A stretch of DNA of 64,000 bases, taken from positions 62,001-126,000 of the IMG/VR virus record IMGVR_UViG_3300017917_001996, one strand, 5' to 3'. Positions 35,001 to 59,041 of this stretch are shown here, one piece after another (position 1 is the stretch's first letter; each line of letters begins with the position of its first letter). The position numbers and the translations under genes are program-made. Under the pieces are notes generated by a model, which did no database searches, was not told the origin of the DNA, and worked only from the letters and a program-made list of their open reading frames with translations.

Positions 35001-38000
35001 ACTCCAGTTCTAGGATCAACACGATTTAAAGTTACATATGCGGTATCATTTGCATATTTAGGTGTTCCTTGTTGGCCCGACGATACATAAGCCGAGGGCA
35101 GGACATCGGTGATAACCCACTCATAAACTTCAACTGTACTTCCTGGGAACATCTCTCCCCAATGCTTAATTCGGTACTCAAGGCTATCTTGTTCATAATC
35201 AACATAGCGAAGATTATCGACATCCCACCAGATGGTACCTTGTTGTTTTTCACCCCAATGGGATTCTAATTCAATTAAGAACTCAGTTGAAGAGCCATTA
35301 TTATATTTGGCTGGATCTATGCTAGATATAAAATCAATGTCAGCTAATGCAGTGCCTAGTATTTTTCCTTTAGCAGGGTCAATTATGTCTAGTCTTTCAA
35401 GTATTACCTTGTCTACATTATTGTAAAGGTACATACTTCCAACTGATGCTAAATCAACTTTAGGTTCTTGGTTGCGTTGAACATTCCATGTTGTGCCATT
35501 GGACAGCACATAGGTAACCGGCGGAGTACCTAAACCAGGAACTACATTGTTTACAGTCTCAGAAATTGGACCATAATATGTAGGACCAATAACATACGGA
35601 TAGACTGGGTTGTCATTGTTGTCAACAGTAACAAAATATGCATATGTACCTTCTGGATAATCTGGTGTTACGCAGAATCTTCCGTTGTGTTGATCTAGAG
35701 TACCACTACCATCAACAAACATATAATCCTGTATAAACATACCCATTGGGTATTGTATAAAGTTACAAGACTCAACAACTCTATAGCTAGAGTTCTTAAA
35801 TCTATAACTAGATCTCATTTTGATAACAGGACTGTTCTTGTTTCCTTTTATTGCATAACCATAAGGACCGTAAATTGGATATCCATCGTTAGCAAAACCT
35901 AATATCTTGCTGTGCCCGTCTGGATGGCGTAATGATCCAGCAAGGTATTTTATTTCTTCGATTTCAGCTGTACCTGGTTTGTCTACAGTTGTTCCAATAC
36001 CTGTTTCCCATGCATTTTCAAATGTAAAGCTATTATAGGAATACATGCCAGATTCTGACAGAATCCCGCCGGCAGCATCCTTGTCTAATACACCATAATT
36101 AGAGTAAACTAAATTGTAATCATAGTCAGAGATTAACAAATAGTCACCAGGAGCGTACCCAGACACGCTAGGCGCTGTAACTGGAACGCCATTGAGCCAA
36201 TAACCGGTAATACCTGTTGCTGCTACTTCGGTTACCGCAGGAATGTCCTTGCCACCATTTAATGGCCAAATTCTATTATAGTGCTGATCCACTGCTGAAC
36301 TTACAGTTTTACCGTGTGTATGGTAAGGTGCGCCAGTTGTGCGAATGTTTATAGAACCGTTTTTAATTCCCCATGCACTGTGGCGGCCGCTGTAATTACC
36401 CAATGTACCTCTAACATAACTGTACACTGCCCAACGACCGTCTTCAGTTGTGTCAACCCAGGCAAAGTCTCCAGTATTTCTTGGTAGCTTGGTATAGTCA
36501 GCATCCCTGTCAGTGACAGTTGCATAACGGCAAGGTTCGAAGATAAACATTTCACCTGAAGATTGTATACTTCCAGTGGTGTCAAGTACGTTGGCTAATG
36601 CCAAGGTAATAAATGCGACAACAGTATTGTATTCTTCAGTGTTAACTACTTGATAGAAACCATTGAAATTACTATCAAAGTTTCTTATAGCAAATACGTC
36701 TCCAATTTGTAAACCATGATCGTACTTGAATGTCAACTTAATTTTATTATCAAGCGCATATTCTAATAGTATCAATTCGTTGTCAGTTGCTCGTGCTTGA
36801 TATACTTGCCAATCTTCATTGAAATCTTTAGCTGCCCATAGTTTGTATCCATCATCTAGAGATGATAAAATATTGCTTCCAATTTCAGAGTACTTTGATA
36901 TATCAAAGATTGTGCCATCTATATCGTTGTAATTAACATAGCCTGCTGTCTTTATATCAGTTTCTGTTTCTTTTAAAGAATTACGATTAATGAATATCGG
37001 AGCACGGTAATTTAAAGGATTGTTTATTAACTGATTAGGCTTAATCGTATTCACCGTATCATTGGAGTCGTCGTCGTAGTTTAACAACTTAAATGCAGAT
37101 GGATTAGCTTTAAACTTGGCCTCATCAAGTATCAGGTCGATACTTTGGTTTGACCTCAAAGCTCCATATTCGCCTACACGAACTGCCCATTCTTCATACA
37201 TCTCAACAGAGCTCTTAACATTATCAAAGTATCTTCCGAACAGTGCAGTTGTTGAATTTTTTGTTCCTTTTTCTTTGATATAACCTTGATAAAACTTAAC
37301 TTGTGTTGTTTGATCCATTCCTAGATTTTCTAAGAATGGTCTATTCCTAAATCCGATCAGACCGGTACTAAACTTTCCAAAGTCTTCGTCAAGAGAAACG
37401 CTGTCTACGTTGTAGACTTCTTCAAATTTCTGAGCATTGTGTGCAAAATTGGGGCTTAGACCAGAATCAATCTTCCTGTCTAGGATACTCCAGTTATCGA
37501 AGTTGAATGCAGTTGTTCCTGCAATGTCTTGAATAGCTGTGTAATTCTTATCTTTGTATCTAACAATATCACCCTTGATATAGTCTTGGTTTTGTTTCCA
37601 GTCGTCGACTTTACCAGTATTGTAGATAAAGCCAGGCGGCTCTAGTCCGCCTTGCCAATCAGTAGTTTTGTTGCCAATAAGTTTAATACGATATTGTCTT
37701 GTACCCAACTCTGGCTTGTAAAGAATATCGTTAAACACTGTAACATTATCAAAAATTAGTACATGTTCTTTCTGAACAAGCTCAAGTTCTGCAAGTGCAA
37801 TAGTCTGCCCTGACACTACTGTTACTGTTGTTAAATTAGTTTCTCTGTTAACACTAATTTCATTTAACGGAATAACGTTAAAGTTAGGTCCAAGAATCTT
37901 TGAACGCTGTGTTTGATTGGTAATTTGATCAACTACAAAGGTTTCATTGAAGAATAGAATTGAATTACTAGCTGGACTTAGTACAACTATATTTCCTTCT

Positions 38001-41000
38001 CTCCAGCCTTGCTCAGACCATGTTAAGAATTCTTTAGCACTCAGTGTCCAATCTAATACATGTGTTAGCTCAGGACTATATTGATTAAAAACAAACCCTT
38101 GGCTTACTAGATAACGCTGATAACCTATTAGGAAATCAACAACCTGTTGTTTATTAGTAAACTCATAGCCATACGGAACAACAATTTTTTCAGATCTGTA
38201 ATTTTCAAAAATTACTGCGTCTGAGTCTGCTGACTGAATGGTATAATATGACCCATTAAACTCGCTAGGAATAACTGTAAAGAACGGATTCTTTAAATCG
38301 TATCCAGATATCGAATACCCTGTCGCCGTTTTTTCAACAATAACTGCACTGTAGGTAGCCTTGGTAACTGCTATTCCATTGTTCAAGTGAACCAGGTAGT
38401 TCTCGTCGGGTATGATAACAGAAGTATTTGTACTGCCTGGACTAAACTGTTCAACTAGAGCAGTTAAGTATTTCTTGTCGGTATAACCTGCAATTTTATA
38501 TCCTAGTTTGATTTCGTTATTATCTAAAAGTCCGCGAATCTTCTCAACTGCATCGACACCTAGGTTAGTTAGATAACCATGTATCCAATTGATATAGCCT
38601 AAGGAACGATTAATCTCTCCATTAATTGTTTCACCATTTATTGTAATACGCTTACCGTTAGGACGTAGTTTTGAATCTTTGATTAGGTAAGAGTCTGTAT
38701 CGGTGTCTTTATAGTACGATGTAGTATCAAACAACAAGCCAAAATACATTGCTGGCTTCATTAAAGCCATGGCACGCTGTACTGCAAAAGGAAATTCGCT
38801 GGTCCTTCTCCAAGCCTCTTCAACTGGTCCATTATCACCAATAACAAAGTTTTGACTAAACTTTGTTCCATTGAAACTTCTTACTAAACGTGCACCAGGA
38901 GGCGGTAGTAAATTACCCAAACCGTCTACTGGAATAATATTTTTTAAACCTGGGCGCTTGAATCTATTGTCTACCGCATTGTTACCGAAGTTAAAACCAT
39001 TTTCTAAATCTGTCCACAATACAGTGTTGTTAGATTTATAAGGTGCTATACCGTATCTAGTTTCCCACCATGTAGGCTTTTCAGTAAAACCTAACATCTC
39101 CCATGGGTGTGTATGAGGACGATCGGTGTCGTATATGTACTTGTAAATACCTCTCCAATGTCCTAGCAATGGCTCGTCATTAATAGTATCGTCGGTTTGA
39201 TTGTAATTCCAAGTAAACTGATCATTAGATAAGAAGTAAGGATTCTTTGTAAATGACAACTGATTATTACCGGCCCACTTTAAGAATTCACCGGTTAAAA
39301 TCTGATTGTACTCTCTAATAGAATATTCAGTGGTACGGAACTTTCCAGGTATTACTGAATGTATATCAAATAAATCTTTATTGTATTGTATCTTGATGTT
39401 GTTGTATATTCTTGTTTCTAATTCTAGTAGATAATTATCTCTTAGATCATTAAACACTGGAGTTAAGCTACCGTCATGACCCTGTATTACCTGTACAGGG
39501 TTTCTATATGTGTTGTCAGTAAATATCTCAGGAACAAACTTAGGATATAAACCTAACTTGGTTGGTGTTTCAGGAACATAATTACCATCAGTATCTAGAT
39601 AACCTTTTACAGTTAAAATGTCTCCAGTGGCAACAGTTAATGAACTAGACAGTTGGATAGTAGGAGTTGTAGGTCCAATACTGTAATCTTTACCAAGAGT
39701 TAATAGCTTCTTGTTTAGATAAACTGATATAGCTTTACTGGTTTTCTTACCTGGGTATATATCAATGCCAATTTCAGTAAATATCTCATTGATGTAGTGT
39801 GTTTTATTTGATGAATTAAGTATCTTAAATTCTTCAACTACATAATTCTTACCCCATGGTAACATGTCACTGTAGAACCATGGGAATGAAATATTCTTAA
39901 CTGCATTAATCGACGATAAAATAGTTTCAATGCCCGAAGAAGGATCTTCTGGATCTAGTTCGGACATTGAAACACATAATTCTAAAAATTTATTCTTAAA
40001 CTTTTGATATTCACGTCGTGCAAAATCTAGACTGTTAATAAAATTAACCTGAGGATCATTTAAAAATAATGCTGTATTAACCAAAGTTGCAGAATGCTGC
40101 AATAACGTACCGGCTCCAAATTTTCCTATATCTCGAGAATTATTTTTTCCTAATGGCGCACCAACTAGATTATTTGTGTTGTTTAAAATCCTAGACCAAT
40201 GGTTTTGCATTTGGCCTAGTGTTACTGCATTAATTAAAATATTTTGAGGATTTAATTCAAGATTAAGTGGTATATTGTAGTAACCTAAGCTGCTCGTCTG
40301 TTTACTGTAGATAATAATGTCAATATCATCCCCAGTTTCCAGTACTGTATCAATATATATTGCTTTAAGAACCCCAACAGTTCTAATCTCTATTAGAGAA
40401 TCGTCAACAATTTTATTGTTAACATAAACTTTAAGATTTGGTTGATCAATCTCGTCGGCTGGTAAAACATCAATTTCAAAATAATTTGTTACACCATCGA
40501 ATGTGTGTTTAATGTGTTGATATTGTTTTGTTTGTTCAGTAACCTTGGGCCAGACACTGGTTTTAACATATGTTTCTCTAGAAACATTGTGCTGTAAGTA
40601 ACCAGTTAATATTTGTTTCGATTCAAAAAGATATGGTTTGTATGTAAATGAGTCTGTATCGAAGTAATTAGTAAAGTTAATATCTGCAAATGAATTACCA
40701 GTATTACTGTATTTTAAAGAAAATCCTAAAATAGAATCAACAGCCGATGTACCTCTAGTATAGCCAAACACTTTGCAACCAGCAAAGGTTGTCTTTGGGT
40801 ACGACGATTCATTACCAAAGCTAATACCTTGGTCGTCAACGACATCAAACAAAGGATCTTGGTTAGCACCAGATTTCCATTGAGACTGTACCCAATTTGA
40901 GCCATTAAACCAATAACTCTTTTTAGCATTAGCTCCAGAATTAATTACTACAGAATCGTAACTAACTGCTGTTTTATGCTCTGTGATAATTATACGAGGA

Positions 41001-43210
41001 CGATTAAATTTAAAACCAGCTGTAATGTAGTTAAATGTAGCAGGTTGTTCTAGTGTCAGTGTATTATTGTTAAGAATATTTTTTACTTTACCAATAAACA
41101 ATCCTTGCAGAGTATATAGCACAGTACCGGGCTCAATTTGTTGAACAAATGATGTCTTTGGATATTGAGCTGCTAGTGTACCATCAACTACTTCGTTGCT
41201 GCCATTTCTGACTGTAATGATACCAGTACCGGTTGCATCAAAAACTGTAGTTGTAGTCTGGTCAATAAATTCTATTTTATAAACTTTTGATCTCACTACT
41301 GGATCAGAATCTGATGGGAATACTACTAACTGCCCTTCTTTGATACCTAAATTTTTAATGGCAGCATCAGCGGGATTACGGTTAGTTAACAAATCAAATG
41401 CGTCTGCAATCGGTGTTGTTCCGATTCTATCATAGCAGCGATCGATAATACCTAAGAACACTCTTCCGTGATTAAACAACTGAATGTCTGGATCAAATTC
41501 AATGATAGGACGACGTGCACGATTTTCTGCAACAATTTCGGGTACAGTTTTGGTATACTCTGCTGTTTTGAGTAAGACATCAATGTGTATCCAACGATTT
41601 AATCTAGACCATGCGTTTAAATCCTTGGATGCACGGTGCATAACAATATACTCAGGTTTAACACTACCGAAGATTGGTTCATCCCACGGCCCTTGGTCAA
41701 ATCCTATTGTGTCCCAAGGAACTGAACTTTCTGGTAATTCACTTTCAATGGGAATTAATAAAGAGAAGTCAACCAACTTAATGCTTTTACCGACGCCCTC
41801 AACAATGTAAGATTTGTTATGATACGAGCTAGGAGTTACAGTGTTGTCGAATTGAACCTTCATGCCATTAGAGAAGACGACTCCGCTAGGACTTGTGTAG
41901 GAAGTTTTGCCTACAATATCAGCATCGACGTTAATTCTATTACCAGGAGAATCAACAATGTGAAGTTTTCCAACAAACTTTGAGTCAGAACCGTCGGTGT
42001 AGTACAAAACAGAAAGAGGAGCAGTAATTTGTCTTGCTGACTCAAACTGTCCCGAAGAGTTTTTAAAAAATTCATTGCCAGCATTAACAGTTCCGTGGAT
42101 GCTGCGAATTCTTGTACTAACAGCAATGTCGACTACAAATTCAAAACGAATACGTGGTGTTCTGTATGTGCCGTTATATAGAGAACTATCTTCAACAATT
42201 TTTACTTTCCAAATTCCTCTTCTTAGCGCATCAGGAACATAACTACCAGAATAATAAGTCCAATCGGCATTGGCGTTGCTAGAGTTTACAAAAACAATAA
42301 ACTCACCTTCAGGAAATCTTGTAGATCCATCGATGTCGTTTAATAGTTGAGCATGTTGAGGATTTGCAGAGTTACGTCGAGGATCGTCATTGGCTAAAGA
42401 TGGTGCCCATATACGACCGTCTAACGACGAAAATGTATCGTTGACTGCATAATGAATATAGTCAATTAGAGGATTTTTTAGATAATGATCTTGTGCATCG
42501 CGCTCGGGTACAGTAAATGAGATAATACCTTGCGTAGCACCGTTGTTAGTAACACCAAAAATATCTCTAGTAGAGACGGTTGGAGAATATTGTTTTTTAC
42601 CACTGGTTCCAGGTTCTGTTTGAATCCAAAACCCACCTGTTTGTAGAACTGAAAAGTAATATGTTGCGCCACGAACTAAGGTTAGGTCAGGGTTATCTAC
42701 AGTACCGGTTAAATCAGTCCTATAGCCATTGGTACTGCGTCCAATGGTATATACTTCGTTATTATTAGGTGTACCGGCAGTAATAGTAATTGTTGCCGGG
42801 CCGTTTGGCATCCAGTAGTACTGAGAGAAATTTGAGAGTTTGTCAAGGTCGATACAAGGATCGTAATTATAGTAGTCAGCCTTAAACAAACGGTCATGGT
42901 TAGACTTAATACCGCCGTAGTACTCAACCTTATTAATCAGATCTTTATAATCAACATATAAATTAACAACATTGTTATTTTCAACAACAACAGCAGGTTC
43001 AAGTTGATAATTTTGTCTATCGTCGGTGGGCTCGATAAGATAATTGTCACTTGCACTATATGCAGTAGAAAATTTTCTTCCCACAAAACCATTTATTTTA
43101 GTCAGCGATGGCTCGCTAATTAATTGGTCTAGCGTAACATTTAGAAACTTTTTGTTAGTTTCTGATCTAAAAATTTCTGGAAGAAAATTGATTGTCTTTC
43201 TAATGGCCAT
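32003..43210 (-). CDS. Giant baseplate wedge-type structural protein (3735 aa) with an inserted YHYH-like domain
   Basis: Follows the gp6-like gene, at the position of T4 gp7; internal HSKILGFANDGYPIYGPYG and LDQHNGRFCVTPDYPEGTYAYF motifs. Confidence 0.75.
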   Translation of the reverse strand: MAIRKTINFLPEIFRSETNKKFLNVTLDQLISEPSLTKINGFVGRKFSTAYSASDNYLIEPTDDRQNYQLEPAVVVENNNVVNLYVDYKDLINKVEYYGGIKSNHDRLFKADYYNYDPCIDLDKLSNFSQYYWMPNGPATITITAGTPNNNEVYTIGRSTNGYRTDLTGTVDNPDLTLVRGATYYFSVLQTGGFWIQTEPGTSGKKQYSPTVSTRDIFGVTNNGATQGIISFTVPERDAQDHYLKNPLIDYIHYAVNDTFSSLDGRIWAPSLANDDPRRNSANPQHAQLLNDIDGSTRFPEGEFIVFVNSSNANADWTYYSGSYVPDALRRGIWKVKIVEDSSLYNGTYRTPRIRFEFVVDIAVSTRIRSIHGTVNAGNEFFKNSSGQFESARQITAPLSVLYYTDGSDSKFVGKLHIVDSPGNRINVDADIVGKTSYTSPSGVVFSNGMKVQFDNTVTPSSYHNKSYIVEGVGKSIKLVDFSLLIPIESELPESSVPWDTIGFDQGPWDEPIFGSVKPEYIVMHRASKDLNAWSRLNRWIHIDVLLKTAEYTKTVPEIVAENRARRPIIEFDPDIQLFNHGRVFLGIIDRCYDRIGTTPIADAFDLLTNRNPADAAIKNLGIKEGQLVVFPSDSDPVVRSKVYKIEFIDQTTTTVFDATGTGIITVRNGSNEVVDGTLAAQYPKTSFVQQIEPGTVLYTLQGLFIGKVKNILNNNTLTLEQPATFNYITAGFKFNRPRIIITEHKTAVSYDSVVINSGANAKKSYWFNGSNWVQSQWKSGANQDPLFDVVDDQGISFGNESSYPKTTFAGCKVFGYTRGTSAVDSILGFSLKYSNTGNSFADINFTNYFDTDSFTYKPYLFESKQILTGYLQHNVSRETYVKTSVWPKVTEQTKQYQHIKHTFDGVTNYFEIDVLPADEIDQPNLKVYVNNKIVDDSLIEIRTVGVLKAIYIDTVLETGDDIDIIIYSKQTSSLGYYNIPLNLELNPQNILINAVTLGQMQNHWSRILNNTNNLVGAPLGKNNSRDIGKFGAGTLLQHSATLVNTALFLNDPQVNFINSLDFARREYQKFKNKFLELCVSMSELDPEDPSSGIETILSSINAVKNISFPWFYSDMLPWGKNYVVEEFKILNSSNKTHYINEIFTEIGIDIYPGKKTSKAISVYLNKKLLTLGKDYSIGPTTPTIQLSSSLTVATGDILTVKGYLDTDGNYVPETPTKLGLYPKFVPEIFTDNTYRNPVQVIQGHDGSLTPVFNDLRDNYLLELETRIYNNIKIQYNKDLFDIHSVIPGKFRTTEYSIREYNQILTGEFLKWAGNNQLSFTKNPYFLSNDQFTWNYNQTDDTINDEPLLGHWRGIYKYIYDTDRPHTHPWEMLGFTEKPTWWETRYGIAPYKSNNTVLWTDLENGFNFGNNAVDNRFKRPGLKNIIPVDGLGNLLPPPGARLVRSFNGTKFSQNFVIGDNGPVEEAWRRTSEFPFAVQRAMALMKPAMYFGLLFDTTSYYKDTDTDSYLIKDSKLRPNGKRITINGETINGEINRSLGYINWIHGYLTNLGVDAVEKIRGLLDNNEIKLGYKIAGYTDKKYLTALVEQFSPGSTNTSVIIPDENYLVHLNNGIAVTKATYSAVIVEKTATGYSISGYDLKNPFFTVIPSEFNGSYYTIQSADSDAVIFENYRSEKIVVPYGYEFTNKQQVVDFLIGYQRYLVSQGFVFNQYSPELTHVLDWTLSAKEFLTWSEQGWREGNIVVLSPASNSILFFNETFVVDQITNQTQRSKILGPNFNVIPLNEISVNRETNLTTVTVVSGQTIALAELELVQKEHVLIFDNVTVFNDILYKPELGTRQYRIKLIGNKTTDWQGGLEPPGFIYNTGKVDDWKQNQDYIKGDIVRYKDKNYTAIQDIAGTTAFNFDNWSILDRKIDSGLSPNFAHNAQKFEEVYNVDSVSLDEDFGKFSTGLIGFRNRPFLENLGMDQTTQVKFYQGYIKEKGTKNSTTALFGRYFDNVKSSVEMYEEWAVRVGEYGALRSNQSIDLILDEAKFKANPSAFKLLNYDDDSNDTVNTIKPNQLINNPLNYRAPIFINRNSLKETETDIKTAGYVNYNDIDGTIFDISKYSEIGSNILSSLDDGYKLWAAKDFNEDWQVYQARATDNELILLEYALDNKIKLTFKYDHGLQIGDVFAIRNFDSNFNGFYQVVNTEEYNTVVAFITLALANVLDTTGSIQSSGEMFIFEPCRYATVTDRDADYTKLPRNTGDFAWVDTTEDGRWAVYSYVRGTLGNYSGRHSAWGIKNGSINIRTTGAPYHTHGKTVSSAVDQHYNRIWPLNGGKDIPAVTEVAATGITGYWLNGVPVTAPSVSGYAPGDYLLISDYDYNLVYSNYGVLDKDAAGGILSESGMYSYNSFTFENAWETGIGTTVDKPGTAEIEEIKYLAGSLRHPDGHSKILGFANDGYPIYGPYGYAIKGNKNSPVIKMRSSYRFKNSSYRVVESCNFIQYPMGMFIQDYMFVDGSGTLDQHNGRFCVTPDYPEGTYAYFVTVDNNDNPVYPYVIGPTYYGPISETVNNVVPGLGTPPVTYVLSNGTTWNVQRNQEPKVDLASVGSMYLYNNVDKVILERLDIIDPAKGKILGTALADIDFISSIDPAKYNNGSSTEFLIELESHWGEKQQGTIWWDVDNLRYVDYEQDSLEYRIKHWGEMFPGSTVEVYEWVITDVLPSAYVSSGQQGTPKYANDTAYVTLNRVDPRTGVIKTRYCYWVAGRSEVTLRSKTHSAYTIAGMIKSPVSQGISYVAVLKDNSVMLYNCGQFLSGTNTALHIDYKLKVNEDIIHSEFELFQEGNSKSILNPRIEEKLIDSLIGADISGNKVPDPSLLPKDRLGLSKQPRQTLIIDRLKAVKSVVDYINSVLIQYPITSRIVNKEIVYSDNFYAASTPPTESEYDYNVDNYIQLDYVPELAANALIPGKKYIIISAGTTNFVTLGAANNNPGTVFTASAAGTGTGLCYPRRIFVATDANYNDYWSVYEKNADSTATLVKVQVFDVTNYWRKVDWYEKGFSSKTKINYTVDSFYQTYTLPLSINDVVKVRNNGGNLFELYQYRAGKLKLVGLQDGTIQLNDSLYNKKGYDFYSFDSGPFDLGSTIELRYILKGIKEDIFVKDLANFYNKFLFAIIEYILAEQKYVDWIFKTSFVSIAHKFEGLIQSSSFIKDQQELYRQYIDEVKPYRTKIREYNLNYSATDETSGAAVSDFDLPPYYDSDLERFRSPSGDLSIDSTLLATNPKYRDWANNYTYEVASIEIAERSKGHLNNPDISIISTDTTGSGATAEAAISSIDGSINRITVTNTGSGYINTPIVNISGTGYTPMSKYANLTANVYSNITSNVTGNIISSNITTVSLTNVRNAIGSPRLYNGKIRKVKTVIRFDRVQYTSAVTDWQSNTAYSAGSYVSYQGMGYKNNTGIGIAASVYFDPSKWTPVSSSSFDNANDRIMAYYQPTATMVPKILNRLIDGLDNPQANVVASVDIDSIISGGAFNGETIAPNLITVGEKYIITTLGNTNFVAMGAPENTLGVIFTATAAGTGTGKLVIAIGASAFGGAGGISSEDITINGGAFVSEILSHSPQELLPGSVFDSLNLRMIRKNESNVVVGGYRVFVSMAEDRSKVVVAANVRTVLSQDLNINDTTITVDDGSVLITPVSPSTPGVIYVNGERIEYSAKISTNVLSNIRRGTGGTGAPIVHSAGTMVEGGNTPSTD

Positions 43211-53018: not shown

Positions 53019-53071
53019 ATAATACTCTCCAGTTATATATTTATGTCCATCAAAATATGCTATTTTAATCG

Positions 53072-53100
53072 TTGACTTTTGCTCAAAAATTTGTTACATT
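53072..53100 (+). promoter_or_regulatory. Sigma70-type promoter of the late sigma factor gene
   Basis: TTGACT-N17-TACATT with TG extension. Confidence 0.7.
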
Positions 53101-53121
53101 ACTCACTAAAGGGGAACTAAA

Positions 53122-53997
53122 ATTAAACACAACTATTTAAACAATAAGGATATACTCAAAGAGATACATCGCAGTAAAAATACCTATTGTGTTTACTCCA
53201 GCCCAGAGTATTCCGATTACGATCTTATCATCAATGACGTTTCTGCAATAACCGCCGAAGTAGTCAATCAAGCTCGAAATAATCGAGCAGAGCGTTTAGC
53301 CAAACTAGCACACGAGCAGGCTACTTCCGGCGGCGAAAAGCGAAAATTAGACGAATTTTATATTGATCCTGTTACTATCAAAGACTCAGAAATCATCTTC
53401 CGAGTAATGACCTGGGATCACGTACCCGTACAGCCTACCGTTAAAAAGGCCACAGATGTAGAAGTTGAAGATGAAATTCATACTGAATATGATATCGAAG
53501 ATGACGCAGTTAAGCTACCGACTGCTGCTGTCAAGTATGTTAAGTGTAATTTTCCTCCATTCCAACACTATAAATTCAACGAAGCAGGTAAGCTCGATTG
53601 CGTAGGCAAGAGCCACTGGAAGGGCCCATTGGACAGTGGAGAATGGTGCAGAGACCACGGTACAATGACCAAAACGTTAGCTACTATGTTTATGAAACTG
53701 TGTGAGCGTTATGCTACACGTAGCAACTGGCGTGGGTACACTTATAATGACGAAATGCGTAGCCAAGCTCTGCTACAGTTAAGTCAAATTGGTTTGCAGT
53801 TTGATGAATCTAAATCACAGAACCCATTTGCTTATTATACTGCTGCTATCACTAATAGTTTCACTCGTGTGCTAAACATCGAAAAACGTAATCAAAACCT
53901 ACGCGATGATATACTAGAAATGAATAACTTTAACCCAAGTTACACACGACAAGGACTAATGAGCGGAGCACATTACGGCGACGGAGACCACGATTAA
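53122..53997 (+). CDS. gp55: Late-transcription sigma factor, gp55-like; N-terminus extended to a non-canonical ATT start
   Basis: NYLNNKDILKEI N-terminal motif; KLCERYA.R.NWRGYTY.DEM and FDE.KSQNPFAYYT...NSF.R.L..EK motifs; frame open from 53110 with no in-frame ATG/GTG/TTG until 53407. Confidence 0.85.
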   Translation: MKHNYLNNKDILKEIHRSKNTYCVYSSPEYSDYDLIINDVSAITAEVVNQARNNRAERLAKLAHEQATSGGEKRKLDEFYIDPVTIKDSEIIFRVMTWDHVPVQPTVKKATDVEVEDEIHTEYDIEDDAVKLPTAAVKYVKCNFPPFQHYKFNEAGKLDCVGKSHWKGPLDSGEWCRDHGTMTKTLATMFMKLCERYATRSNWRGYTYNDEMRSQALLQLSQIGLQFDESKSQNPFAYYTAAITNSFTRVLNIEKRNQNLRDDILEMNNFNPSYTRQGLMSGAHYGDGDHD

Positions 53998-55063: not shown

Positions 55064-56829
55064 TGATTCGAATTAAGTCAGTAACTGCTAAAAACTTTTT
55101 ATCTATTGGTAATGTAACACAGAGCGTTAGCCTAGATCGCACAGACCTAACACTGATTCTAGGTGAAAACTTAGACTTAGGTGGCGACGACTCTGGTGCT
55201 CGTAACGGTACAGGCAAGAGCGCATTGCTTAACATTGTAAGCTATGCCTTGTACGGCTCAGCATTAACCAACATCAAGAAAGACAACTTGATCAATCGTA
55301 CCAACGGTAAAAACATGTTGGTTACTATTGATTTTGAAAAAGATGGTGTCGACTACAAAATTGAGCGTGGACGCAAGCCTAACGTCATGCGCTTCTTTGT
55401 CGGCGATCAAGAACAAAAAGTCGAAGACGAAAGTCAAGGCGACAGCAGAGAAACACAGGCTGCTATTGAAAAGTTAATCAACATGAGTCACACAATGTTC
55501 AAACACATTGTGGCACTTAACACTTACACAGAGCCCTTCTTAAGTTTAAAAGCTAACGAGCAACGCGAAATCATTGAACAATTGCTAGGTATTACCCTAC
55601 TCAGTGAAAAAGCAGAATCGCTTAAAGAGAGAATACGTGTAAGCAAGGACGGTATTCAACAAGAAGAATTCCGTATTCGTGCTATCATCGATGCTAACAA
55701 ACGCATCGAAGATCAGATCTCTGCACTAAAGCGCAGACAAACACTGTGGCAAACTAAACATCAAGAAGACTGTGAGCAGTTAAGTTTAGCCTACGATCAA
55801 CTTAATCAAATTGATATTGAGCAAGAGCTAGCTGCACATCGTGCCTTGACTGAATACAGCGAAAAATACAAACAAATCAAAGACTTAAACAGTTGGATTA
55901 AACGTTGTGAGCTAGACCAGCAGCGTGAACTTAAACTAATTGATCAACTTAAATCCGAAATTGCAAGTTTAGAAAATCACACCTGTCATAGTTGTGGACA
56001 AGCATTTCACGATGATAAACAAGAAAAACTATTGGCAGATAAGCGTAAACAACTACAAGAAGCTGCTTTACAAGCACTAGCTACAGATACGCAACTGCAA
56101 GAGCACACAGAGGCCCTAGCATTGTTAGGTGAGCTAGGCGCACAACCGCAGGTCTTCTACGATAAAGAAAGCGATGCTGTTGAACATCGTGCTACTTTGT
56201 CTAACTTGCAACAACAGTTAGCTACCAAGCGAGCCGAACAAGATCCTTATGCAGAACAGATCGAAGAAATGACTAAAACTGCATTGGAAGAAATTAATTA
56301 CGATCGTATCAATGAATTAACTAAACTCAAGGATCACGAAGAATTCTTACTTAAACTTTTAACCAACAAAGACAGTTTTATTCGTAAAAAGATCATTGAT
56401 CAAAACCTAAGTTACTTAAACTCAAGATTGAGTTACTATCTAGAAAAGATTGGATTACCACATCAAGTTGAATTCTTAAACGACTTGACTGTGAGTATCA
56501 CAGAATTAGGTAGAGACTTAGACTTTGATAACCTAAGCCGCGGTGAGCGCAACAGACTTATTTTAAGTTTGAGCTGGGCATTCCGCGATGTTTGGGAAAA
56601 CTTATATCAGAAAATTAATTTGTTGTTTGTTGACGAGCTTGTGGACTCTGGCCTAGATTCTAGTGGCATGGAAAGTTCATTGGCTATCCTTAAAAAGATT
56701 AGTCGCGACAGCAAGAAAAGCGTTTGGTTAGTAAGTCATAGAGACGAACTAGTTAGTCGTGTAGAAAACATATTGCGAGTTACTAAGAGCAATGGGTTTA
56801 CAACTTACGACACAGACGTAGAAAATTGA
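55063..56829 (+). CDS. gp46: Recombination ATPase subunit (Rad50/SbcC-like)
   Basis: GARNGTGKS Walker A, CHSC zinc hook, LSRGE signature, LFVDELVD Walker B, VSH. Confidence 0.92.
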   Translation: MIRIKSVTAKNFLSIGNVTQSVSLDRTDLTLILGENLDLGGDDSGARNGTGKSALLNIVSYALYGSALTNIKKDNLINRTNGKNMLVTIDFEKDGVDYKIERGRKPNVMRFFVGDQEQKVEDESQGDSRETQAAIEKLINMSHTMFKHIVALNTYTEPFLSLKANEQREIIEQLLGITLLSEKAESLKERIRVSKDGIQQEEFRIRAIIDANKRIEDQISALKRRQTLWQTKHQEDCEQLSLAYDQLNQIDIEQELAAHRALTEYSEKYKQIKDLNSWIKRCELDQQRELKLIDQLKSEIASLENHTCHSCGQAFHDDKQEKLLADKRKQLQEAALQALATDTQLQEHTEALALLGELGAQPQVFYDKESDAVEHRATLSNLQQQLATKRAEQDPYAEQIEEMTKTALEEINYDRINELTKLKDHEEFLLKLLTNKDSFIRKKIIDQNLSYLNSRLSYYLEKIGLPHQVEFLNDLTVSITELGRDLDFDNLSRGERNRLILSLSWAFRDVWENLYQKINLLFVDELVDSGLDSSGMESSLAILKKISRDSKKSVWLVSHRDELVSRVENILRVTKSNGFTTYDTDVEN

Positions 56830-56854
56830 CTCACAACAGGGACGAATATATAAT
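56826..56854 (+). promoter_or_regulatory. Sigma70-type promoter
   Basis: TTGACT-N17-TATAAT overlapping the gp46 stop codon. Confidence 0.8.
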
Positions 56855-56974: not shown

Positions 56975-57496
56975 ATGAGTGGATCAAAAAGTAAAACCAA
57001 AGGTAACAGCTGGGAGCGCACGATTGCTAAGTTTTTAACTGAGCAACACGGCGGTTCGTTTATACGAGCGCCTCATAGCGGAGCTTACATTGGTGGTACT
57101 AACTCCTTTAGAAAAGCTAGTTTGGATCAAAGCCAAATTAAAAGTTTTAAAGGAGACATTATTCCGCCTGAAACTTGGGTTCATTTTAATGCAGAAGCTA
57201 AAAATTATGCAGATTTCCCATTTCATCAACTTTATCAAGGTCCAGTGCCTATGCTAGAGAATTGGATTGAACAGCTACTTGATGTTGCCGACCCCGGTGA
57301 TCTCAACGTGCTGATCATGAAATTTAATCGCAAAGGCAGTTTTATAGCCACACAACCGACACCAAGTCTAACTCCAAATCCAAACCACTTTATTTACAAA
57401 TCCGAAAAATTTGGCACATGGTTAATTCAAGATTTCAAATCTTTCTGGCTCAACAATAAATCCCAAATCGAACTTTTAGCCACCAAGGCACAATAA
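56975..57496 (+). CDS. PD-(D/E)XK nuclease, Holliday-junction resolvase-like
   Basis: K.KGNSWER..A..L, GDII, AEAKN motifs. Confidence 0.7.
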   Translation: MSGSKSKTKGNSWERTIAKFLTEQHGGSFIRAPHSGAYIGGTNSFRKASLDQSQIKSFKGDIIPPETWVHFNAEAKNYADFPFHQLYQGPVPMLENWIEQLLDVADPGDLNVLIMKFNRKGSFIATQPTPSLTPNPNHFIYKSEKFGTWLIQDFKSFWLNNKSQIELLATKAQ

Positions 57497-57509
57497 CATC
57501 ATCGCTGCT

Positions 57510-57845
57510 ATGTTTGATCGAGGTACCTCGATCCCTATTGAGTGTGTGTGAAAGAACACCCGCAGACTTAGGTGCAGCACGGTAGGCACTAACGTAAGGT
57601 GCTAAATGATAGGAGCAATGTGAAAAAGATACAACTCCAGCGTATACCAGTTCGCTAACTAGGGCTGACTATACGTACCGTCGCAATCGAATCTAGAGTA
57701 GGGAGTACAGGGTGACCGCTTCCGTGTCCAAGGATAATCTCTTTTAGTTAGTGTGAGGAAAGCACTCAGATAATGTTCCCTTCACAGTTTGGCCTGTTGG
57801 GCCGAATTGTGATCTACATCTAGATAATATCGTTAAAAGAGTTAC
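57510..57845 (+). ncRNA. Candidate large structured non-coding RNA (family not recognised)
   Basis: No ORF in the track; nested helices including G-U pairs and a GUGA tetraloop consistent with the + strand. Confidence 0.5.
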
Positions 57846-57974
57846 AGTTAAAAAAACAATTAGATAGATTAAACAGATTAGCGAAGCAATCCATTGCTGA
57901 GCGATAGCGAAAGCAATAGACTAACGAAGTTAGTCTCGAAAAGAAGAGAACAAAGATAAATGAACTGCTATGAC

Positions 57975-58207
57975 TTAGAAGAAAGGCATTTTAGTTTCTT
58001 TAGTTGTTTCTAAGTTACTCTTAATGATCTCTGCGATAATCTCTCGCTCTGACCCACTCATGTCCATAATCTCTGAGTAAGTCAATCCTCCACGCATATA
58101 CCAACACATACGCAGTACTTCTTGTTTTAAGGCTTTTACATCTTTATCGTGAGCTTCTAAAAACTGCACGATCTCTGCGTCAGTTTTAAATGTTAAAAGC
58201 CTTTTGC
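57975..58207 (-). CDS. Baseplate hub assembly chaperone C-terminal part (gp51-like), probably reached by -1 frameshift from the gp26-like gene
   Basis: MCWYMRGG..Y.E...MS..ER..I motif; frame open back to the slippery site 58208-58214; only a GTG without evident SD internally. Confidence 0.6.
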
Positions 58208-59041
58208 GAAAAAATTTGCGTAATCAAAGGTTAAGTCGATGTCATAAGGAGTATGACATTCTTGGCAGCTCAGATGTAGTTGTTCGGGTTTAGCCTGTTC
58301 AACAAAACTAGAAATCTTAGCTTGCAACTGTTTGATAAAAGCAGATTCTGCATTTCGATAGAATTCATCAATATACTCTTGTTCGACTACACGAGTACCA
58401 TCACTCATTTCAATATACTCTGTGCTTTGTACGCAACTGTTAATTCCGTGTGTGTATAGTCGATTCATTGCAGCAGCTAGCTCTAAAGATTTCTTTTCTG
58501 CATCCATGTCGGCGTCGCTGAGTAAGTTTAAGATCTTTTGTTCTTCAAACTCGATCATATTAGTTTTGTTAACTGCAAAATAGTGTTGTGGTTTGAACTT
58601 AATTTTTAGATCACGATAAGCTAGTGGCTCATTATAATTTGGGCAGCTCAACTGTGCCAATGGATAACCCAAATCTACTTCGTGGGTGTTATCTTCGCCA
58701 CAGTGTGGGCATTTACTGTTAAAGCTCATGTTGTTGCCATAAGTTGCGATACGTATAGCAATCAAGATAGCATCAACATCAACGCTGGGCATTTGCCACG
58801 CATCCCGGACGTTTGGGCAACAGCTTTGAATTACATCAACAATGCCTTGTCCGTTGAGCAATGCATCGGGTGTTCTTAGTAATATTTCGTCTTTGGTACT
58901 CATTGGATATATGGGCAATTCTTGATTTGCTGGCATATCTAATGCACCGTCTACCCACCAACGGCCACCGCTAGGTAGTTTTAGATAGATAGCTGGCTGA
59001 CGAAAATGTCCAGCTAATGGGTTCGGACGCTGTAATTCCAT
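58193..59041 (-). CDS. gp26: Baseplate hub assembly chaperone, gp26-like
   Basis: NPL...FRQP..Y..LPS.G, YPM...DE....TPDALLNG, D.D..LIAIR.ATYG, CP.C and C..C motifs. Confidence 0.8.
   Translation of the reverse strand: MELQRPNPLAGHFRQPAIYLKLPSGGRWWVDGALDMPANQELPIYPMSTKDEILLRTPDALLNGQGIVDVIQSCCPNVRDAWQMPSVDVDAILIAIRIATYGNNMSFNSKCPHCGEDNTHEVDLGYPLAQLSCPNYNEPLAYRDLKIKFKPQHYFAVNKTNMIEFEEQKILNLLSDADMDAEKKSLELAAAMNRLYTHGINSCVQSTEYIEMSDGTRVVEQEYIDEFYRNAESAFIKQLQAKISSFVEQAKPEQLHLSCQECHTPYDIDLTFDYANFFAKGF

What the first reader, a model, noticed from the sequence alone, without database searches (positions are those of the whole stretch)
57510..57845. Candidate novel large structured ncRNA between the resolvase-like gene and the hub chaperones
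Seen: the only long ORF-free gap in a gene-dense window, packed with nested helices. These include a perfect 18-bp palindrome GATCGAGGTACCTCGATC (57516-57533); ACGGTA (57589-57594)/TACCGT (57676-57681) closing a multibranch junction with GGCACT/GGTGCT, GGAG/CTCC and CGTATA/TATACG arms; GGGAG/CTTCC (57701-57723) capped by GG-GUGA-CC (GNRA); and CTCTTTTA (57739-57746)/TAAAAGAG (57834-57841) enclosing TGAG/CTCA, a 12-bp stem CACAGTTTGGCC/GGCCGAATTGTG and ATCTA/TAGAT. G-U pairs and the GNRA loop point to a + strand RNA, downstream of the promoter at 56826. I do not recognise it as tRNA, tmRNA, RNase P or a group I/II intron. Known: large phages carry big ncRNAs of unknown function (e.g. GOLLD, ROOL). 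Inference: a new multi-domain RNA, or a structured replication-origin transcript.
Basis: partly seen in the sequence, partly recalled or inferred. Interest (0 to 1): 0.8.

Follow-up and report, generated by a model that had tools for sequence, protein, structure and literature searches.

The report
New large structured jumbo-phage RNA
The gene-free gap holds a real RNA of about 430 nt with two pseudoknots, found in hundreds of uncultivated jumbo phages and probably in lab phages such as E. coli phage 121Q; it matches no catalogued RNA family and its function is unknown.

Summary
The finding holds. Window 57503-57937 (+ strand) encodes a non-coding, highly structured RNA. It is the longest ORF-free stretch in the window and shows no codon periodicity. 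It matches none of the 4227 Rfam 15 families, and ARAGORN finds no tRNA or tmRNA.

Homologues occur in all 240 loci retrieved with a 22-nt core motif, plus 44 of the 79 other loci found through the neighbouring gene. The RNA always lies between a gp46/SbcC-like gene upstream on the same strand and baseplate-hub genes downstream on the opposite strand.

On 98 sequences, three core hairpins are 99.1% paired (42-52% in slid controls), and 12 of 20 pairs show compensatory changes. Conserved G.U pairs fix the + strand. Two pseudoknots co-vary strongly.

The "GNRA" loop is in fact one strand of a pseudoknot.

The 3' part holds two co-evolving direct copies of one module and two mutually exclusive pairings, which suggests a switch. 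The partner of the repeated element is unknown.

Cultured Rak2-like phages (121Q, CBB, GAP32, BF) carry a conserved, unannotated, structured RNA at the same position. It is probably a distant homologue.

Function is unresolved. My best guess is a stable trans-acting RNA. Weak expression evidence exists.

The parts
56826..56854 (+). Sigma-70-type promoter TTGACT-17 nt-TATAAT upstream of the PDDEXK gene. It is the likely source of the transcript that runs into the RNA.
   Evidence: Consensus scan, 11 of 12 matches. Function is inferred.
56975..57496 (+). Context gene: PDDEXK_15 endonuclease (173 aa). Its stop codon lies 7 nt before the RNA's first helix. It is not a constant neighbour of the RNA.
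   Evidence: Pfam PF24608, E = 2e-22. Present upstream of the RNA in 58 of 165 viral loci and 16 of 120 metagenome loci.
57503..57937 (+). The whole conserved structured RNA, about 435 nt: domain I, domain II, domain III and 3' hairpins T1 and T2.
   Evidence: 74-81% nucleotide identity to 12 loci whose neighbouring protein is 70-76% identical. nhmmer and CM hits in 285 loci. No codon periodicity: 81/78/82 variable columns by phase. No Rfam match.
57504..57578 (+). Domain I. P1 (57504-08 with 57574-78) closes hairpin P2 (57516-33, the 18-nt palindrome) and P3/P3a (57534-72).
   Evidence: P1, P3 and P3a are 79-83% paired on 102 diverse sequences, with compensatory changes at every pair, against 16-61% in slid controls. 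P2 covaries in the 13 close relatives but varies in the wider family.
57579..57681 (+). Domain II. P4 (ACGGUA 57579-84 with UACCGU 57676-81) closes a four-way junction. Its arms are hairpins P4a (57585-603), P4b (57612-38) and P4c (57640-76).
   Evidence: P4b and inner P4c are 98-100% paired on 98 sequences, and 10 of their 12 pairs show compensatory changes. P4a is 73% paired, with 5 of 6 pairs compensatory. P4 itself is only moderately supported: 4 of 6 pairs are 79-96% paired.
57680..57716 (+). Pseudoknot PK1. GUCGC (57680-84), just 3' of P4, pairs with the P6 loop plus its closing C (GUGAC, 57712-16).
   Evidence: All five positions pair in 89 of 108 sequences and four of five in 18 more. 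The mean is 4.81, against 3.95 +/- 0.065 when loops are shuffled among sequences. More than 10 distinct complementary combinations occur.
57695..57742 (+). P5. AGAG (57695-98) pairs with CUCU (57739-42), enclosing P6 and the variable hairpin H-B (57725-36).
   Evidence: 91-98% paired. The outer pair is A-U in 47, U-A in 38 and G-C in 5 sequences. MI-APC is 0.86-0.99.
57701..57723 (+). P6, the most conserved hairpin: GGGAGU-ACA-GG-GUGA-CC-GCUUCC. It is the core of the 22-nt search motif.
   Evidence: 99-100% paired on 98 sequences, with G-C/A-U covariation and invariant G.U pairs. The motif GTAGGGRGTACMGGNNRACCGC retrieved at least 120 viral and at least 120 metagenome loci.
57655..57751 (+). 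Pseudoknot PK2. The P4c apical loop CUAACUA (57655-61) pairs with UAGUUAG (57745-51) in domain III.
   Evidence: 80-90% paired at all 7 positions on 98 CM-aligned sequences. Between 3 and 41 sequences per pair show compensatory changes. Slid controls give 26-52%.
57752..57786 (+). Module 1. A long hairpin made of P7 (UGUGA 57752-56 with UCACA 57782-86) and inner P8. Element h (ACUCAGAUAAUG, 57764-75) sits in its apical loop.
   Evidence: Per-sequence folding gives a median of 8 enclosing base pairs in 102 sequences. The stems differ between lineages but stay complementary.
57783..57811 (+). Hairpin H-D (CACAGUUUGGCC/GGCCGAAUUGUG). Its lower 4 bp use the same UCACA strand as P7, so the two pairings exclude each other.
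   Evidence: The upper stem covaries with 4-5 pair types per position. Lower pairs: 57785-57809 is C-G in 36 and U-A in 30 sequences; 57787-57807 is A-U 49, C-G 16, G-U 14. In the thermodynamic MFE the strand pairs with copy 2 in 65 of 102 sequences and with copy 1 in 10 of 102.
57808..57829 (+). Module 2, a 3' direct copy of module 1's key parts: UGUGA (57808-12) and element k (AUCUAGAUAAUA, 57818-29). It is largely single-stranded.
   Evidence: Identity-type covariation between h and k: all three variable positions are identical in 190 of 205 distinct RNAs, against 28.5 +/- 4.8 after shuffling. MI is 0.8-1.1 bits.
57842..57892 (+). A/U-rich linker between domain III and the 3' hairpins. It is poorly conserved in sequence.
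   Evidence: Alignment A1. GC is 0.33-0.39.
57893..57917 (+). Hairpin T1, with the conserved loop GAGCGAUAGCGAA.
   Evidence: The stem covaries. The loop motif is kept in distant members and occurs once in the window. T1 stays beside the RNA even where genes are inserted downstream.
57918..57936 (.). Hairpin T2 (AGACUAAC-GAA-GUUAGUCU). It marks the 3' end of the conserved block and looks like a terminator for the convergent minus-strand hub genes.
   Evidence: Two pairs covary, U-A/A-U and G-C/A-U, 7 sequences against 6. Terminator-like on the minus strand here and in L089.
57975..58169 (-). Context: a conserved 64-aa gene followed by the 282-aa baseplate-hub gene (58193-59041, PF12322). They are the constant downstream neighbours and run convergent to the RNA.
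   Evidence: tblastn finds them downstream on the opposite strand in every locus long enough to show them: 83/83 and 74/74 in the metagenome set. Pfam.

Best explanation
Window 57503-57937 encodes a + strand non-coding RNA of about 430 nt that belongs to a large family with no catalogue entry.

Shown:
- The RNA folds into three domains. Domain II is a four-way junction. Domain III is a three-way junction around the near-invariant P6 hairpin.
- Two pseudoknots lock the domains together. PK1 joins the P6 loop to the strand after P4. PK2 joins the P4c loop to domain III.
- The RNA is the last element of the rightward gp47/gp46 (SbcCD-like) recombination-nuclease transcription unit. It runs convergent to the baseplate-hub genes.
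- Its 3' part holds two co-evolving copies of one module (UGUGA ... ACUC/AUCU-RGAURAWR). Both copies are complementary to the single strand UCACA, so two pairings exclude each other.

Inferred:
- The RNA is released from the operon transcript and kept as a stable, compactly folded RNA that acts in trans.
- The pseudoknotted body is a scaffold, possibly protein-bound.
- The duplicated 11-12-nt element is the specificity determinant. It is displayed once in a hairpin loop and once in the 3' tail, and it base-pairs with one nucleic-acid partner encoded elsewhere.
- Competition between the two copies for the shared strand works as a conformational switch between the two presentations.

Cultured Rak2-like jumbo phages carry what is probably a distant homologue at the same genomic position. 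There it has its own promoter and terminator.
For: Reality and strand:
- The non-coding gap is as conserved as the neighbouring protein.
- RNAalifold on 13 close relatives gives 98 pairs, 34 of them compensatory.
- On 98 sequences the pairs are 99.1% formed, against 42-52% in slid controls. There are 239 compensatory cells against 43.5 in shuffles, and 0 of 500 shuffles reach the observed values.
- Invariant U.G and G.U pairs would be A.C mismatches on the other strand.
- Fold z-score is -3.0 on the + strand and -1.0 on the - strand.
- There is no codon periodicity.

Pseudoknots.

Breadth and synteny. Only 6 hits fall in 185,579 reference genomes, and all are MAG contigs.

Not catalogued. No paper describing it was found.

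Duplicated module and exclusive pairings.
- The three positions that vary between phages take all 8 combinations, yet match between the two copies in 93% of RNAs. This pattern fits base-pair specificity.

Expression (weak): one 227-nt metatranscriptome contig lies wholly inside the RNA (57599-57825, 4 differences). The adjacent CDS has no coverage.

Rak2-like counterpart:
- It sits at the same position, is conserved, and has a TGnTATAAT promoter and a hairpin followed by seven U.
- RNAalifold gives 113 pairs, 55 compensatory, in 8 phages.
- The small model R2 hits the same aligned site in 5 of 8 phages; the best E-value is 0.035.
- nhmmer gives E = 0.012 at that site in XaC1.
- The PK1 analogue covaries there: GUUGC/GCAAC, GUUAC/GUAAC and GUUGU/ACAAC.
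Against: - No partner complementary to the repeated element was found in the RNA, in 5-10 kb flanks of 91 loci, or in the 64-kb window. The proposed trans target is therefore hypothetical.
- Transcript ends, stability and processing are unknown. The expression evidence is a single contig of depth 2 and could be DNA carry-over.
- In the window's family there is no U-tract terminator on the + strand after T2. No dedicated promoter was seen directly upstream of the RNA.
- Homology with the Rak2-like RNA rests on weak scores. Only one hit is near significance.
- The switch is inferred from covariation and thermodynamics only. In the largest clade the competition involves only about 2 shared nucleotides.
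Confidence: 0.55

Rival explanations
1. The RNA is a large ribozyme or the RNA subunit of a ribonucleoprotein enzyme. The double-pseudoknotted core forms an active site. The two identical elements are two substrate or cleavage sites read by the same site, for example excision of the roughly 55-nt segment between them.
For: - Size, compaction by two pseudoknots, and near-invariant unpaired nucleotides in junctions (AAAUGAU, GAAAAAG, GUAGGG, the UAC bulge) resemble catalytic RNAs.
- Two identical sites flank a conserved hairpin.
Against: - No similarity to any ribozyme model in Rfam.
- No internal guide complementary to the sites.
Confidence: 0.15
2. The element is a replication-origin transcript, a primer precursor like ColE1 RNA II or T4 oriE RNA. 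The alternative pairings control primer maturation. The two direct repeats are iteron-like sites for an initiator protein.
For: - One strand that can pair with either of two similar segments is the alpha/beta/gamma logic of ColE1 RNA II (established knowledge).
- Concerted evolution of direct repeats is typical of iterons.
- An A/T-rich stretch follows.
- The neighbours are recombination and replication genes, including RNase HI next to the gap in Phosso.
- The cumulative GC-skew minimum of the window lies at 52-56 kb.
Against: - The elaborate conserved tertiary fold goes beyond what known primer RNAs need.
- The skew minimum coincides with the gene-strand switch at 53 kb, not with the RNA.
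- There are only two repeats. Independent variation at three positions fits nucleic-acid pairing better than protein recognition.
- There is no direct evidence of initiation here.
Confidence: 0.12
3. The element is a cis-acting 3'-terminal part of the gp47/gp46 operon mRNA. It would act as a stabiliser against 3' exonucleases or as an insulator between convergent early and late transcription, without any trans function.
For: - It is always the last element of the rightward unit and abuts convergent genes.
- In the window it starts 7 nt after a stop codon with no promoter of its own.
- T2 looks like a terminator for the opposing unit.
Against: - A simple hairpin would be enough for that role. 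About 340 nt of double-pseudoknotted, sequence-invariant core and a co-evolving repeat would not be expected.
- The upstream gene is freely replaced (PDDEXK, GIY-YIG homing endonuclease and others) while the RNA stays the same.
- The Rak2-like counterpart has its own promoter and terminator, and its upstream neighbour is on the other strand.
Confidence: 0.12
4. The element is not an RNA. It is a DNA-level element, such as protein-binding sites or cruciforms, or a decayed gene.
For: - The 18-nt perfect palindrome and the direct repeats could be DNA sites.
Against: - Helices tolerate G.U but not A.C, on one strand only.
- Long-range pseudoknot covariation.
- No ORF or periodicity.
- The palindrome is not conserved as a palindrome outside close relatives.
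Confidence: 0.03

Closest known systems
GOLLD and ROOL (large ornate RNAs of unknown function, often phage-associated)
   Same: - Several hundred nucleotides long.
- Multi-domain, pseudoknotted and strongly covarying.
- Encoded by phages or prophages.
- Function unknown.
   Different: - No match to their Rfam models, even at permissive thresholds.
- Smaller: about 430 nt against about 580-800 nt.
- Not next to tRNA genes.
- Fixed synteny between gp46 and the baseplate-hub genes.
- Whether it forms multimers is unknown.
ColE1 RNA II primer precursor
   Same: - One strand can pair with an upstream or a downstream segment of similar sequence, giving two exclusive folds.
- Lies in a replication and recombination gene neighbourhood.
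   Different: - No evidence of an origin, of RNase H processing or of an antisense regulator.
- Far more tertiary structure.
- No sequence relationship.
Phage P4 immunity RNA (seqA/seqB/seqC) and P1/P7 c4 antisense RNA
   Same: Direct repeats in one transcript evolve in concert because both pair with one short complementary sequence. A few nucleotides set the specificity between related phages. This comparison rests on my own knowledge of those systems, not on a tool result.
   Different: - In those systems the complementary partner lies within the same transcript. Here none was found in cis.
- Those RNAs are about 70 nt and simple.
Unannotated structured RNA of Rak2-like jumbo phages (121Q, CBB, GAP32, BF, XbC2, 7t3), found here
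   Same: - Same genomic slot and strand.
- The stretch from the P4 3' strand to P6 aligns.
- The PK1 analogue covaries.
- A P5-like helix encloses two hairpins.
   Different: - Longer, about 500-620 nt.
- Own promoter and U-tract terminator.
- The remaining domains cannot be aligned.
- Homology scores are weak: best E-values 0.012-0.035.
- No h/k duplication was recognised.
Guide RNAs encoded beside nuclease genes (omega-RNA/HEARO of IscB and TnpB, IS110 bridge RNA)
   Same: In the window, a structured RNA lies immediately downstream of an endonuclease gene and carries short variable segments.
   Different: - The linkage is not conserved: the PDDEXK gene is absent upstream in 211 of 285 loci.
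- No IscB, TnpB or IS110 gene is present.
- No HEARO match in Rfam.

Membership tests
Any Rfam 15 family (4227 models, including RNase P, tmRNA, group I/II introns, 6S, GOLLD, ROOL, HEARO, OLE, raiA, riboswitches and small ribozymes) | Score at or above the family's gathering threshold. | tested here: not met
   - 0 matches in the 64-kb window.
- Only three junk hits with E above 1 in 57300-58200 at the permissive setting.
- 0 matches with E of 1 or less in six diverse family members.
tRNA / tmRNA | Cloverleaf, or tRNA-like domain plus tag reading frame. | tested here: not met
   ARAGORN finds none in the window.
Group I / group II intron | Interrupts a host gene whose exons rejoin, and has a conserved catalytic core (P3-P9 with G-site, or domain V). 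| tested here: not met
   - It lies between complete genes. The upstream gene varies between loci.
- No Intron_gpI, Intron_gpII or D1-D4 hit.
Riboswitch / 5' leader | Lies upstream of a regulated gene on the same strand. | tested here: not met
   The next genes downstream are on the opposite strand in every locus.
Nuclease guide RNA (omega-RNA or bridge-RNA type) | Constant linkage to its effector gene. | tested here: not met
   A PDDEXK gene lies upstream in only 58 of 165 and 16 of 120 loci. In L089 a GIY-YIG SegE-like gene and an unknown ORF take its place.
CRISPR mini-array / RNA anti-CRISPR | Identical full-length repeats separated by variable spacers. | tested here: not met
   Only the flanks of the two modules are identical. 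The 'spacer' is a conserved, covarying hairpin.
Protein-coding gene or small ORF | Conserved reading frame and third-position variation. | tested here: not met
   - Variable columns by phase: 81/78/82.
- No ORF of 60 aa or more.
- The h-to-k spacing is 49-63 nt with no preference for multiples of 3.
New family: gp46-hub intergenic RNA of jumbo phages (defined here) | P6 core motif, PK1 and PK2 complementarity, and position between a gp46-like gene (same strand) and hub genes (opposite strand). | tested here: met
   The window sequence has all of these. It scores 158.9 bits, E = 4e-29, with model R1, although it was one of R1's seed sequences.
ColE1 RNA II-like primer RNA | Alternative pairings of one strand. 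| tested here: met
   UCACA (57782-86) can pair with either UGUGA copy, and all three segments co-vary.
ColE1 RNA II-like primer RNA | Persistent RNA-DNA hybrid at an origin, RNase H cleavage and start of DNA synthesis. | not testable with these tools
   Needs infected-cell experiments or marker-frequency data.

The most novel reading that the evidence does not exclude
A new class of large RNA is a core, conserved component of T4-like jumbo phages, from freshwater and soil phages to coliphage 121Q. It would be either a new ribozyme/RNP or a programmable two-state RNA. Its duplicated 12-nt element would be a fast-evolving specificity code that pairs with a phage or host nucleic acid, for example to control replication, recombination or the early-to-late transition, or to discriminate between co-infecting relatives.
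Probability: 0.3. Interest if true: 0.9.

Novelty: categorically new. Interest (0 to 1): 0.8.

Why it matters
Large, intricately folded RNAs without a known function are rare. Past examples turned out to be ribozymes, RNP cores or unprecedented RNA assemblies.

This one is abundant in environmental jumbo phages. A 22-nt exact motif reached the retrieval limit of two collections. Its genomic position is fixed while the neighbouring genes turn over. It also carries an unusual signature: two copies of one element that evolve in lock-step, together with mutually exclusive pairings.

A probable counterpart exists in culturable phages of E. coli, Pectobacterium, Cronobacter, Serratia and Salmonella. 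This makes the question directly testable by genetics, RNA-seq, structure probing and cryo-EM. These regions are currently unannotated, or annotated as tiny hypothetical ORFs, in dozens of GenBank records.

Tried and rejected
- Known families: Rfam at gathering and permissive thresholds on the window, on six relatives and on four cultured-phage loci; ARAGORN. Nothing found.
- BLASTN of the window RNA and of a member of the largest clade against 50,697 phage records: no match.
- Guide RNA of the PDDEXK nuclease: rejected, because the linkage is not conserved.
- Helices CUCUUUUA/UAAAAGAG and AUCUA/UAGAU, RNAalifold's long-range AUCUAGA/UCUAGAU pairing, and the AGUG/CACU hairpin: not supported by the family.
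- A cis partner for the repeated element h/k: MI against every column, and a per-sequence complement search. None found.
- A local or in-window trans partner: complements are not enriched.
- h/k as a promoter or genome-wide motif: AGATAAT is only two-fold enriched and has no shared context.
- Rolling-circle or coding concatemer (DRT2-like): spacing is not a multiple of 3.
- CsrA GGA sites, Cas12a-like repeat, K-turn, kissing-dimer palindrome: each fits only some sequences and was rejected by inspecting the alignments.
- Homologue in PA5oct, Phosso or Atu_ph07: models R1 and R2 and a motif pattern found nothing credible. The four ncRNAs published for PA5oct lie elsewhere in that genome.
- One collection scan was wasted on a mistyped motif.
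- A typed full structure including the pseudoknots was not submitted to the count of structure pairs, to avoid sending a long typed string. The pseudoknot statistics were computed in scripts instead.
Full report
**1. The observation**

The region was read directly. The one error is ACGGTA, which lies at 57579-57584 rather than 57589-57594.

The stretch 57497-57974 is the longest in the window without an ORF of 60 aa or more. A second such gap of 384 nt lies at 53023-53406, so this is the longest gap but not the only one.

The promoter TTGACT-17-TATAAT at 56826-56854 matches the consensus at 11 of 12 positions.

As single-stranded RNA the + strand folds better than its shuffles (-132.8 kcal/mol, z = -3.0, 0 of 100 shuffles as good). 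The - strand does not (z = -1.0).

**2. Not a known RNA**

- Rfam 15 gives no match in the window at gathering thresholds.
- The permissive setting gives only three chance-level hits with E above 1.
- Six diverse relatives give nothing.
- ARAGORN finds no tRNA or tmRNA.
- Full-text searches found no description of it. The four ncRNAs reported for the related phage PA5oct lie elsewhere in that genome (PMC7318152). A survey of more than 10,000 viral candidate RNAs does not mention it in its main text (PMC10690425).

**3. Context**

The flanking genes are a Metallophos SbcD-like gene, an SMC/AAA_23 SbcC (gp46)-like gene and a PDDEXK_15 endonuclease on the + strand. A 64-aa gene and a T4_baseplate (PF12322) hub gene follow on the - strand.

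The closest cultured relatives by the gp46-like protein reach only 45-49% identity. They are PA5oct, Phosso, Atu_ph07 and the Rak2-like group. The window is therefore part of an uncultivated jumbo phage (IMG/VR contig of 250 kb).

**4. Relatives and conservation**

The PDDEXK protein retrieved 80 viral loci, one of which (L002) is the window itself. In the 12 closest loci the non-coding gap is 74-81% identical, while the neighbouring protein is 70-76% identical. Iterated nhmmer found the element in 45 of the 80 loci, always on the + strand.

All 240 retrieved loci contain the whole element.

In 185,579 reference genomes the motif occurs only 6 times, all on MAG contigs. The RNA is therefore a phage RNA.

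Synteny is constant. A gp46-like gene lies upstream on the same strand, 0.5-6 kb away. The 64-aa and hub genes lie downstream on the opposite strand, 11-2900 nt away.

The PDDEXK gene is upstream in only 74 of 285 loci. In L089 its place is taken by a SegE-like GIY-YIG homing endonuclease and an unknown ORF. The RNA is therefore not tied to the 'resolvase-like' gene.

**5. It is an RNA on the + strand, and non-coding**

- Variable columns show no three-base periodicity: 81/78/82.
- RNAalifold on 13 close sequences predicts 98 pairs, 34 of them with compensatory changes.
- A covariance model (R1) of 57577-57752 recovers 98 of 100 non-redundant loci, with E from 1e-11 to 1e-33.
- On that alignment the three core hairpins are 99.1% paired, against 42-52% when partners are slid.
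- Twelve of 20 pairs carry changes on both sides: 239 cells against 43.5 in shuffles. None of 500 shuffles reaches the observed values.
- Several pairs are invariant U.G or G.U. On the other strand these would be A.C mismatches.

**6. Architecture (window coordinates)**

- Domain I: P1 (57504-08 with 57574-78) closes the variable hairpin P2 (the palindrome) and P3/P3a.
- Domain II: P4 (57579-84 with 57676-81) closes hairpins P4a, P4b and P4c.
- Domain III: P5 (AGAG 57695-98 with CUCU 57739-42) encloses the near-invariant hairpin P6 (57701-23) and a variable hairpin H-B.

Two pseudoknots tie these together.

- PK1: the five nucleotides after P4 (57680-84) pair with the P6 loop. All five pair in 89 of 108 sequences. 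The mean is 4.81 against 3.95 +/- 0.065 after shuffling, and more than ten complementary combinations occur.
- PK2: the P4c loop CUAACUA (57655-61) pairs with UAGUUAG (57745-51). It is 80-90% paired at all seven positions, with up to 41 compensatory sequences per pair. Slid controls give 26-52%.

- CUCUUUUA does not pair with UAAAAGAG. Its CUCU half belongs to P5, and the adjacent UAGUUAG belongs to PK2.
- AUCUA/UAGAU is not conserved.
- The GUGA 'GNRA' cap is a pseudoknot strand that reads UCAA, CUGA, AUGA and so on in relatives.

Two hairpins, T1 (with the conserved loop GAGCGAUAGCGAA) and T2, follow an A/U-rich linker. They stay beside the RNA even when genes are inserted downstream. The conserved block therefore ends near 57937.

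**7. The unusual 3' part**

Mutual-information analysis found column pairs that co-vary by identity rather than by complementarity.

- Element h (57764-75, ACUCAGAUAAUG) and element k (57818-29, AUCUAGAUAAUA) lie 49-63 nt apart.
- Three positions vary between phages, and all eight combinations occur.
- These positions are the same in h and k in 190 of 205 distinct RNAs, against 28.5 +/- 4.8 when k is shuffled among sequences.
- The pentamer UGUGA occurs before each element (57752-56 and 57808-12). Both copies are complementary to UCACA (57782-86), and all three segments change together: UACGA/UUGUA, UGAC/GUCA.

Per-sequence folding shows that copy 1 plus UCACA forms a long hairpin (P7/P8) with h in the apical loop. 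The median is 8 enclosing base pairs. Copy 2 extends hairpin H-D using the same strand. The two pairings exclude each other. The copy-2 form is more stable by about 5 kcal/mol on average.

No segment complementary to h/k was found in any of these places:

- the RNA itself
- 5-10 kb flanks of 91 loci
- the 64-kb window

The spacing is not a multiple of three. This part remains unexplained. The independence of the three positions suggests base-pairing with a single partner encoded elsewhere. A protein that reads both sites, as with iterons, is the alternative.

**8. Expression**

Only weak evidence is available. A metatranscriptome run holds one 227-nt contig that lies entirely inside the RNA (57599-57825, 4 differences, depth 2). 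It has no coverage of the adjacent PDDEXK gene. DNA carry-over cannot be excluded.

**9. Cultured phages**

Model R1 found nothing in PA5oct, Phosso, Serratia phage BF or Atu_ph07.

The same interval in these phages contains unannotated gaps next to a junction-resolvase gene. The BF gap folds well (z = -4.0).

BLASTN of the BF gap showed that it is conserved at 65-78% identity across 62 Rak2-like records. These include phages of Serratia, Erwinia, Yersinia, Pectobacterium, Xanthomonas, Cronobacter, Salmonella, Klebsiella and E. coli (121Q). Most are unannotated there, or annotated as tiny ORFs.

An alignment of eight of them shows:

- a conserved TGnTATAAT promoter
- a hairpin followed by seven U
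- 113 predicted pairs, 55 of them compensatory

A 53-position model of the window family's core (R2, from the P4 3' strand to P6) hits the same aligned position on the + strand in five of the eight phages. The E-values are XaC1 0.035, XbC2 0.76, ph0011 1.3, BF 2.9 and 121Q 3.4. nhmmer gives E = 0.012 at that site in XaC1.

The PK1 analogue co-varies there: GUUGC/GCAAC in five phages, GUUAC/GUAAC in CBB and GAP32, and GUUGU/ACAAC in XbC2 (read). A P5-like helix again encloses two hairpins.

I judge distant homology probable, at about 0.6, but not proven.

**10. How it most likely works**

Shown: a compact double-pseudoknotted RNA fold; its position at the end of the gp47/gp46 unit, convergent with the late hub genes; a duplicated module with exclusive pairings.

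Inferred: the RNA is cut from or terminated on the operon transcript and persists as a stable RNA acting in trans. Its body serves as a scaffold, and the duplicated element serves as a sequence-specific recognition site whose presentation is switched.

Rivals:

- A ribozyme or RNP enzyme.
- An origin or primer RNA with iteron-like repeats. The ColE1 RNA II analogy of one strand choosing between two similar partners is close.
- A purely cis-acting 3' stabiliser or insulator. The size, invariance and tertiary structure argue against this last option, as does the independent promoter and terminator of the Rak2-like counterpart.

**11. Novelty and verdict**

No catalogued family or described system matches. 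The nearest comparisons are other large phage-associated RNAs of unknown function (GOLLD, ROOL), to which it shows no similarity.

It is a real feature and a new RNA class. It is widespread and now has a probable handle in culturable phages. Function remains open.

Noticed in passing
L209:2903-3705 (Serratia phage BF), L331:1479-2264 (CBB), L332:1627-2462 (121Q), L333:1474-2241 (XbC2), L334, L335, L336, L337: Cultured Rak2-like jumbo phages have a conserved, mostly unannotated stretch of 750-840 nt between EndoVII and the baseplate-hub genes. It has its own TGnTATAAT promoter and a U-tract terminator, and RNAalifold gives 113 pairs, 55 of them compensatory. In some records it is annotated as several tiny hypothetical ORFs.
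   Followed up: yes
window 53019-53406: This is the second ORF-free gap (384-388 nt). It lies at the point where gene orientation switches from - to +, and it coincides with the minimum of cumulative GC skew in the window. It could be a divergent promoter region or an origin-like region.
   Followed up: no
L089:3889-4368: A SegE-like GIY-YIG homing-endonuclease gene (PF19835, E = 2e-33) sits between gp46 and the RNA in this relative. The interval upstream of the RNA is a hotspot for variable endonuclease cargo: PDDEXK here, and RusA or EndoVII in cultured relatives.
   Followed up: partly
L001:9867-10531 (PA5oct), L208:3760-4773 (Phosso): ORF-free gaps of 660-1015 nt lie next to a Holliday-junction resolvase gene in the same gp46-to-hub interval. 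Neither model found a homologue of the RNA there. Whether they hold an analogous RNA was not tested.
   Followed up: partly
window 57899-57911, and the same place in relatives: The loop of hairpin T1, GAGCGAUAGCGAA (family consensus roughly UGAGC-NNA-GCGAA), is conserved even in distant members. It occurs only once in the window. Its role is unknown.
   Followed up: partly
whole window: The heptamer AGATAAT, the core of the repeated element, occurs 24 times against 12.6 +/- 3.7 expected. The occurrences share no context.
   Followed up: partly
L203, L205 (MAG 'Haliscomenobacter sp. EUL_031', contigs of 148 and 183 kb) and four other MAG contigs: Contigs filed in bacterial MAGs carry this phage RNA motif. 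They are probably jumbo-phage contigs binned with bacterial genomes.
   Followed up: no
window 32003-43210 (- strand): A giant ORF of 3735 aa lies within a run of very large minus-strand ORFs (1104-1580 aa). They are presumably structural or tail-fibre-like proteins.
   Followed up: no
L209:2978-3035 (BF only): The 5' part of the BF RNA carries a direct repeat AGUAAAACCCUG, two copies about 42 nt apart. The other Rak2-like phages lack it.
   Followed up: no
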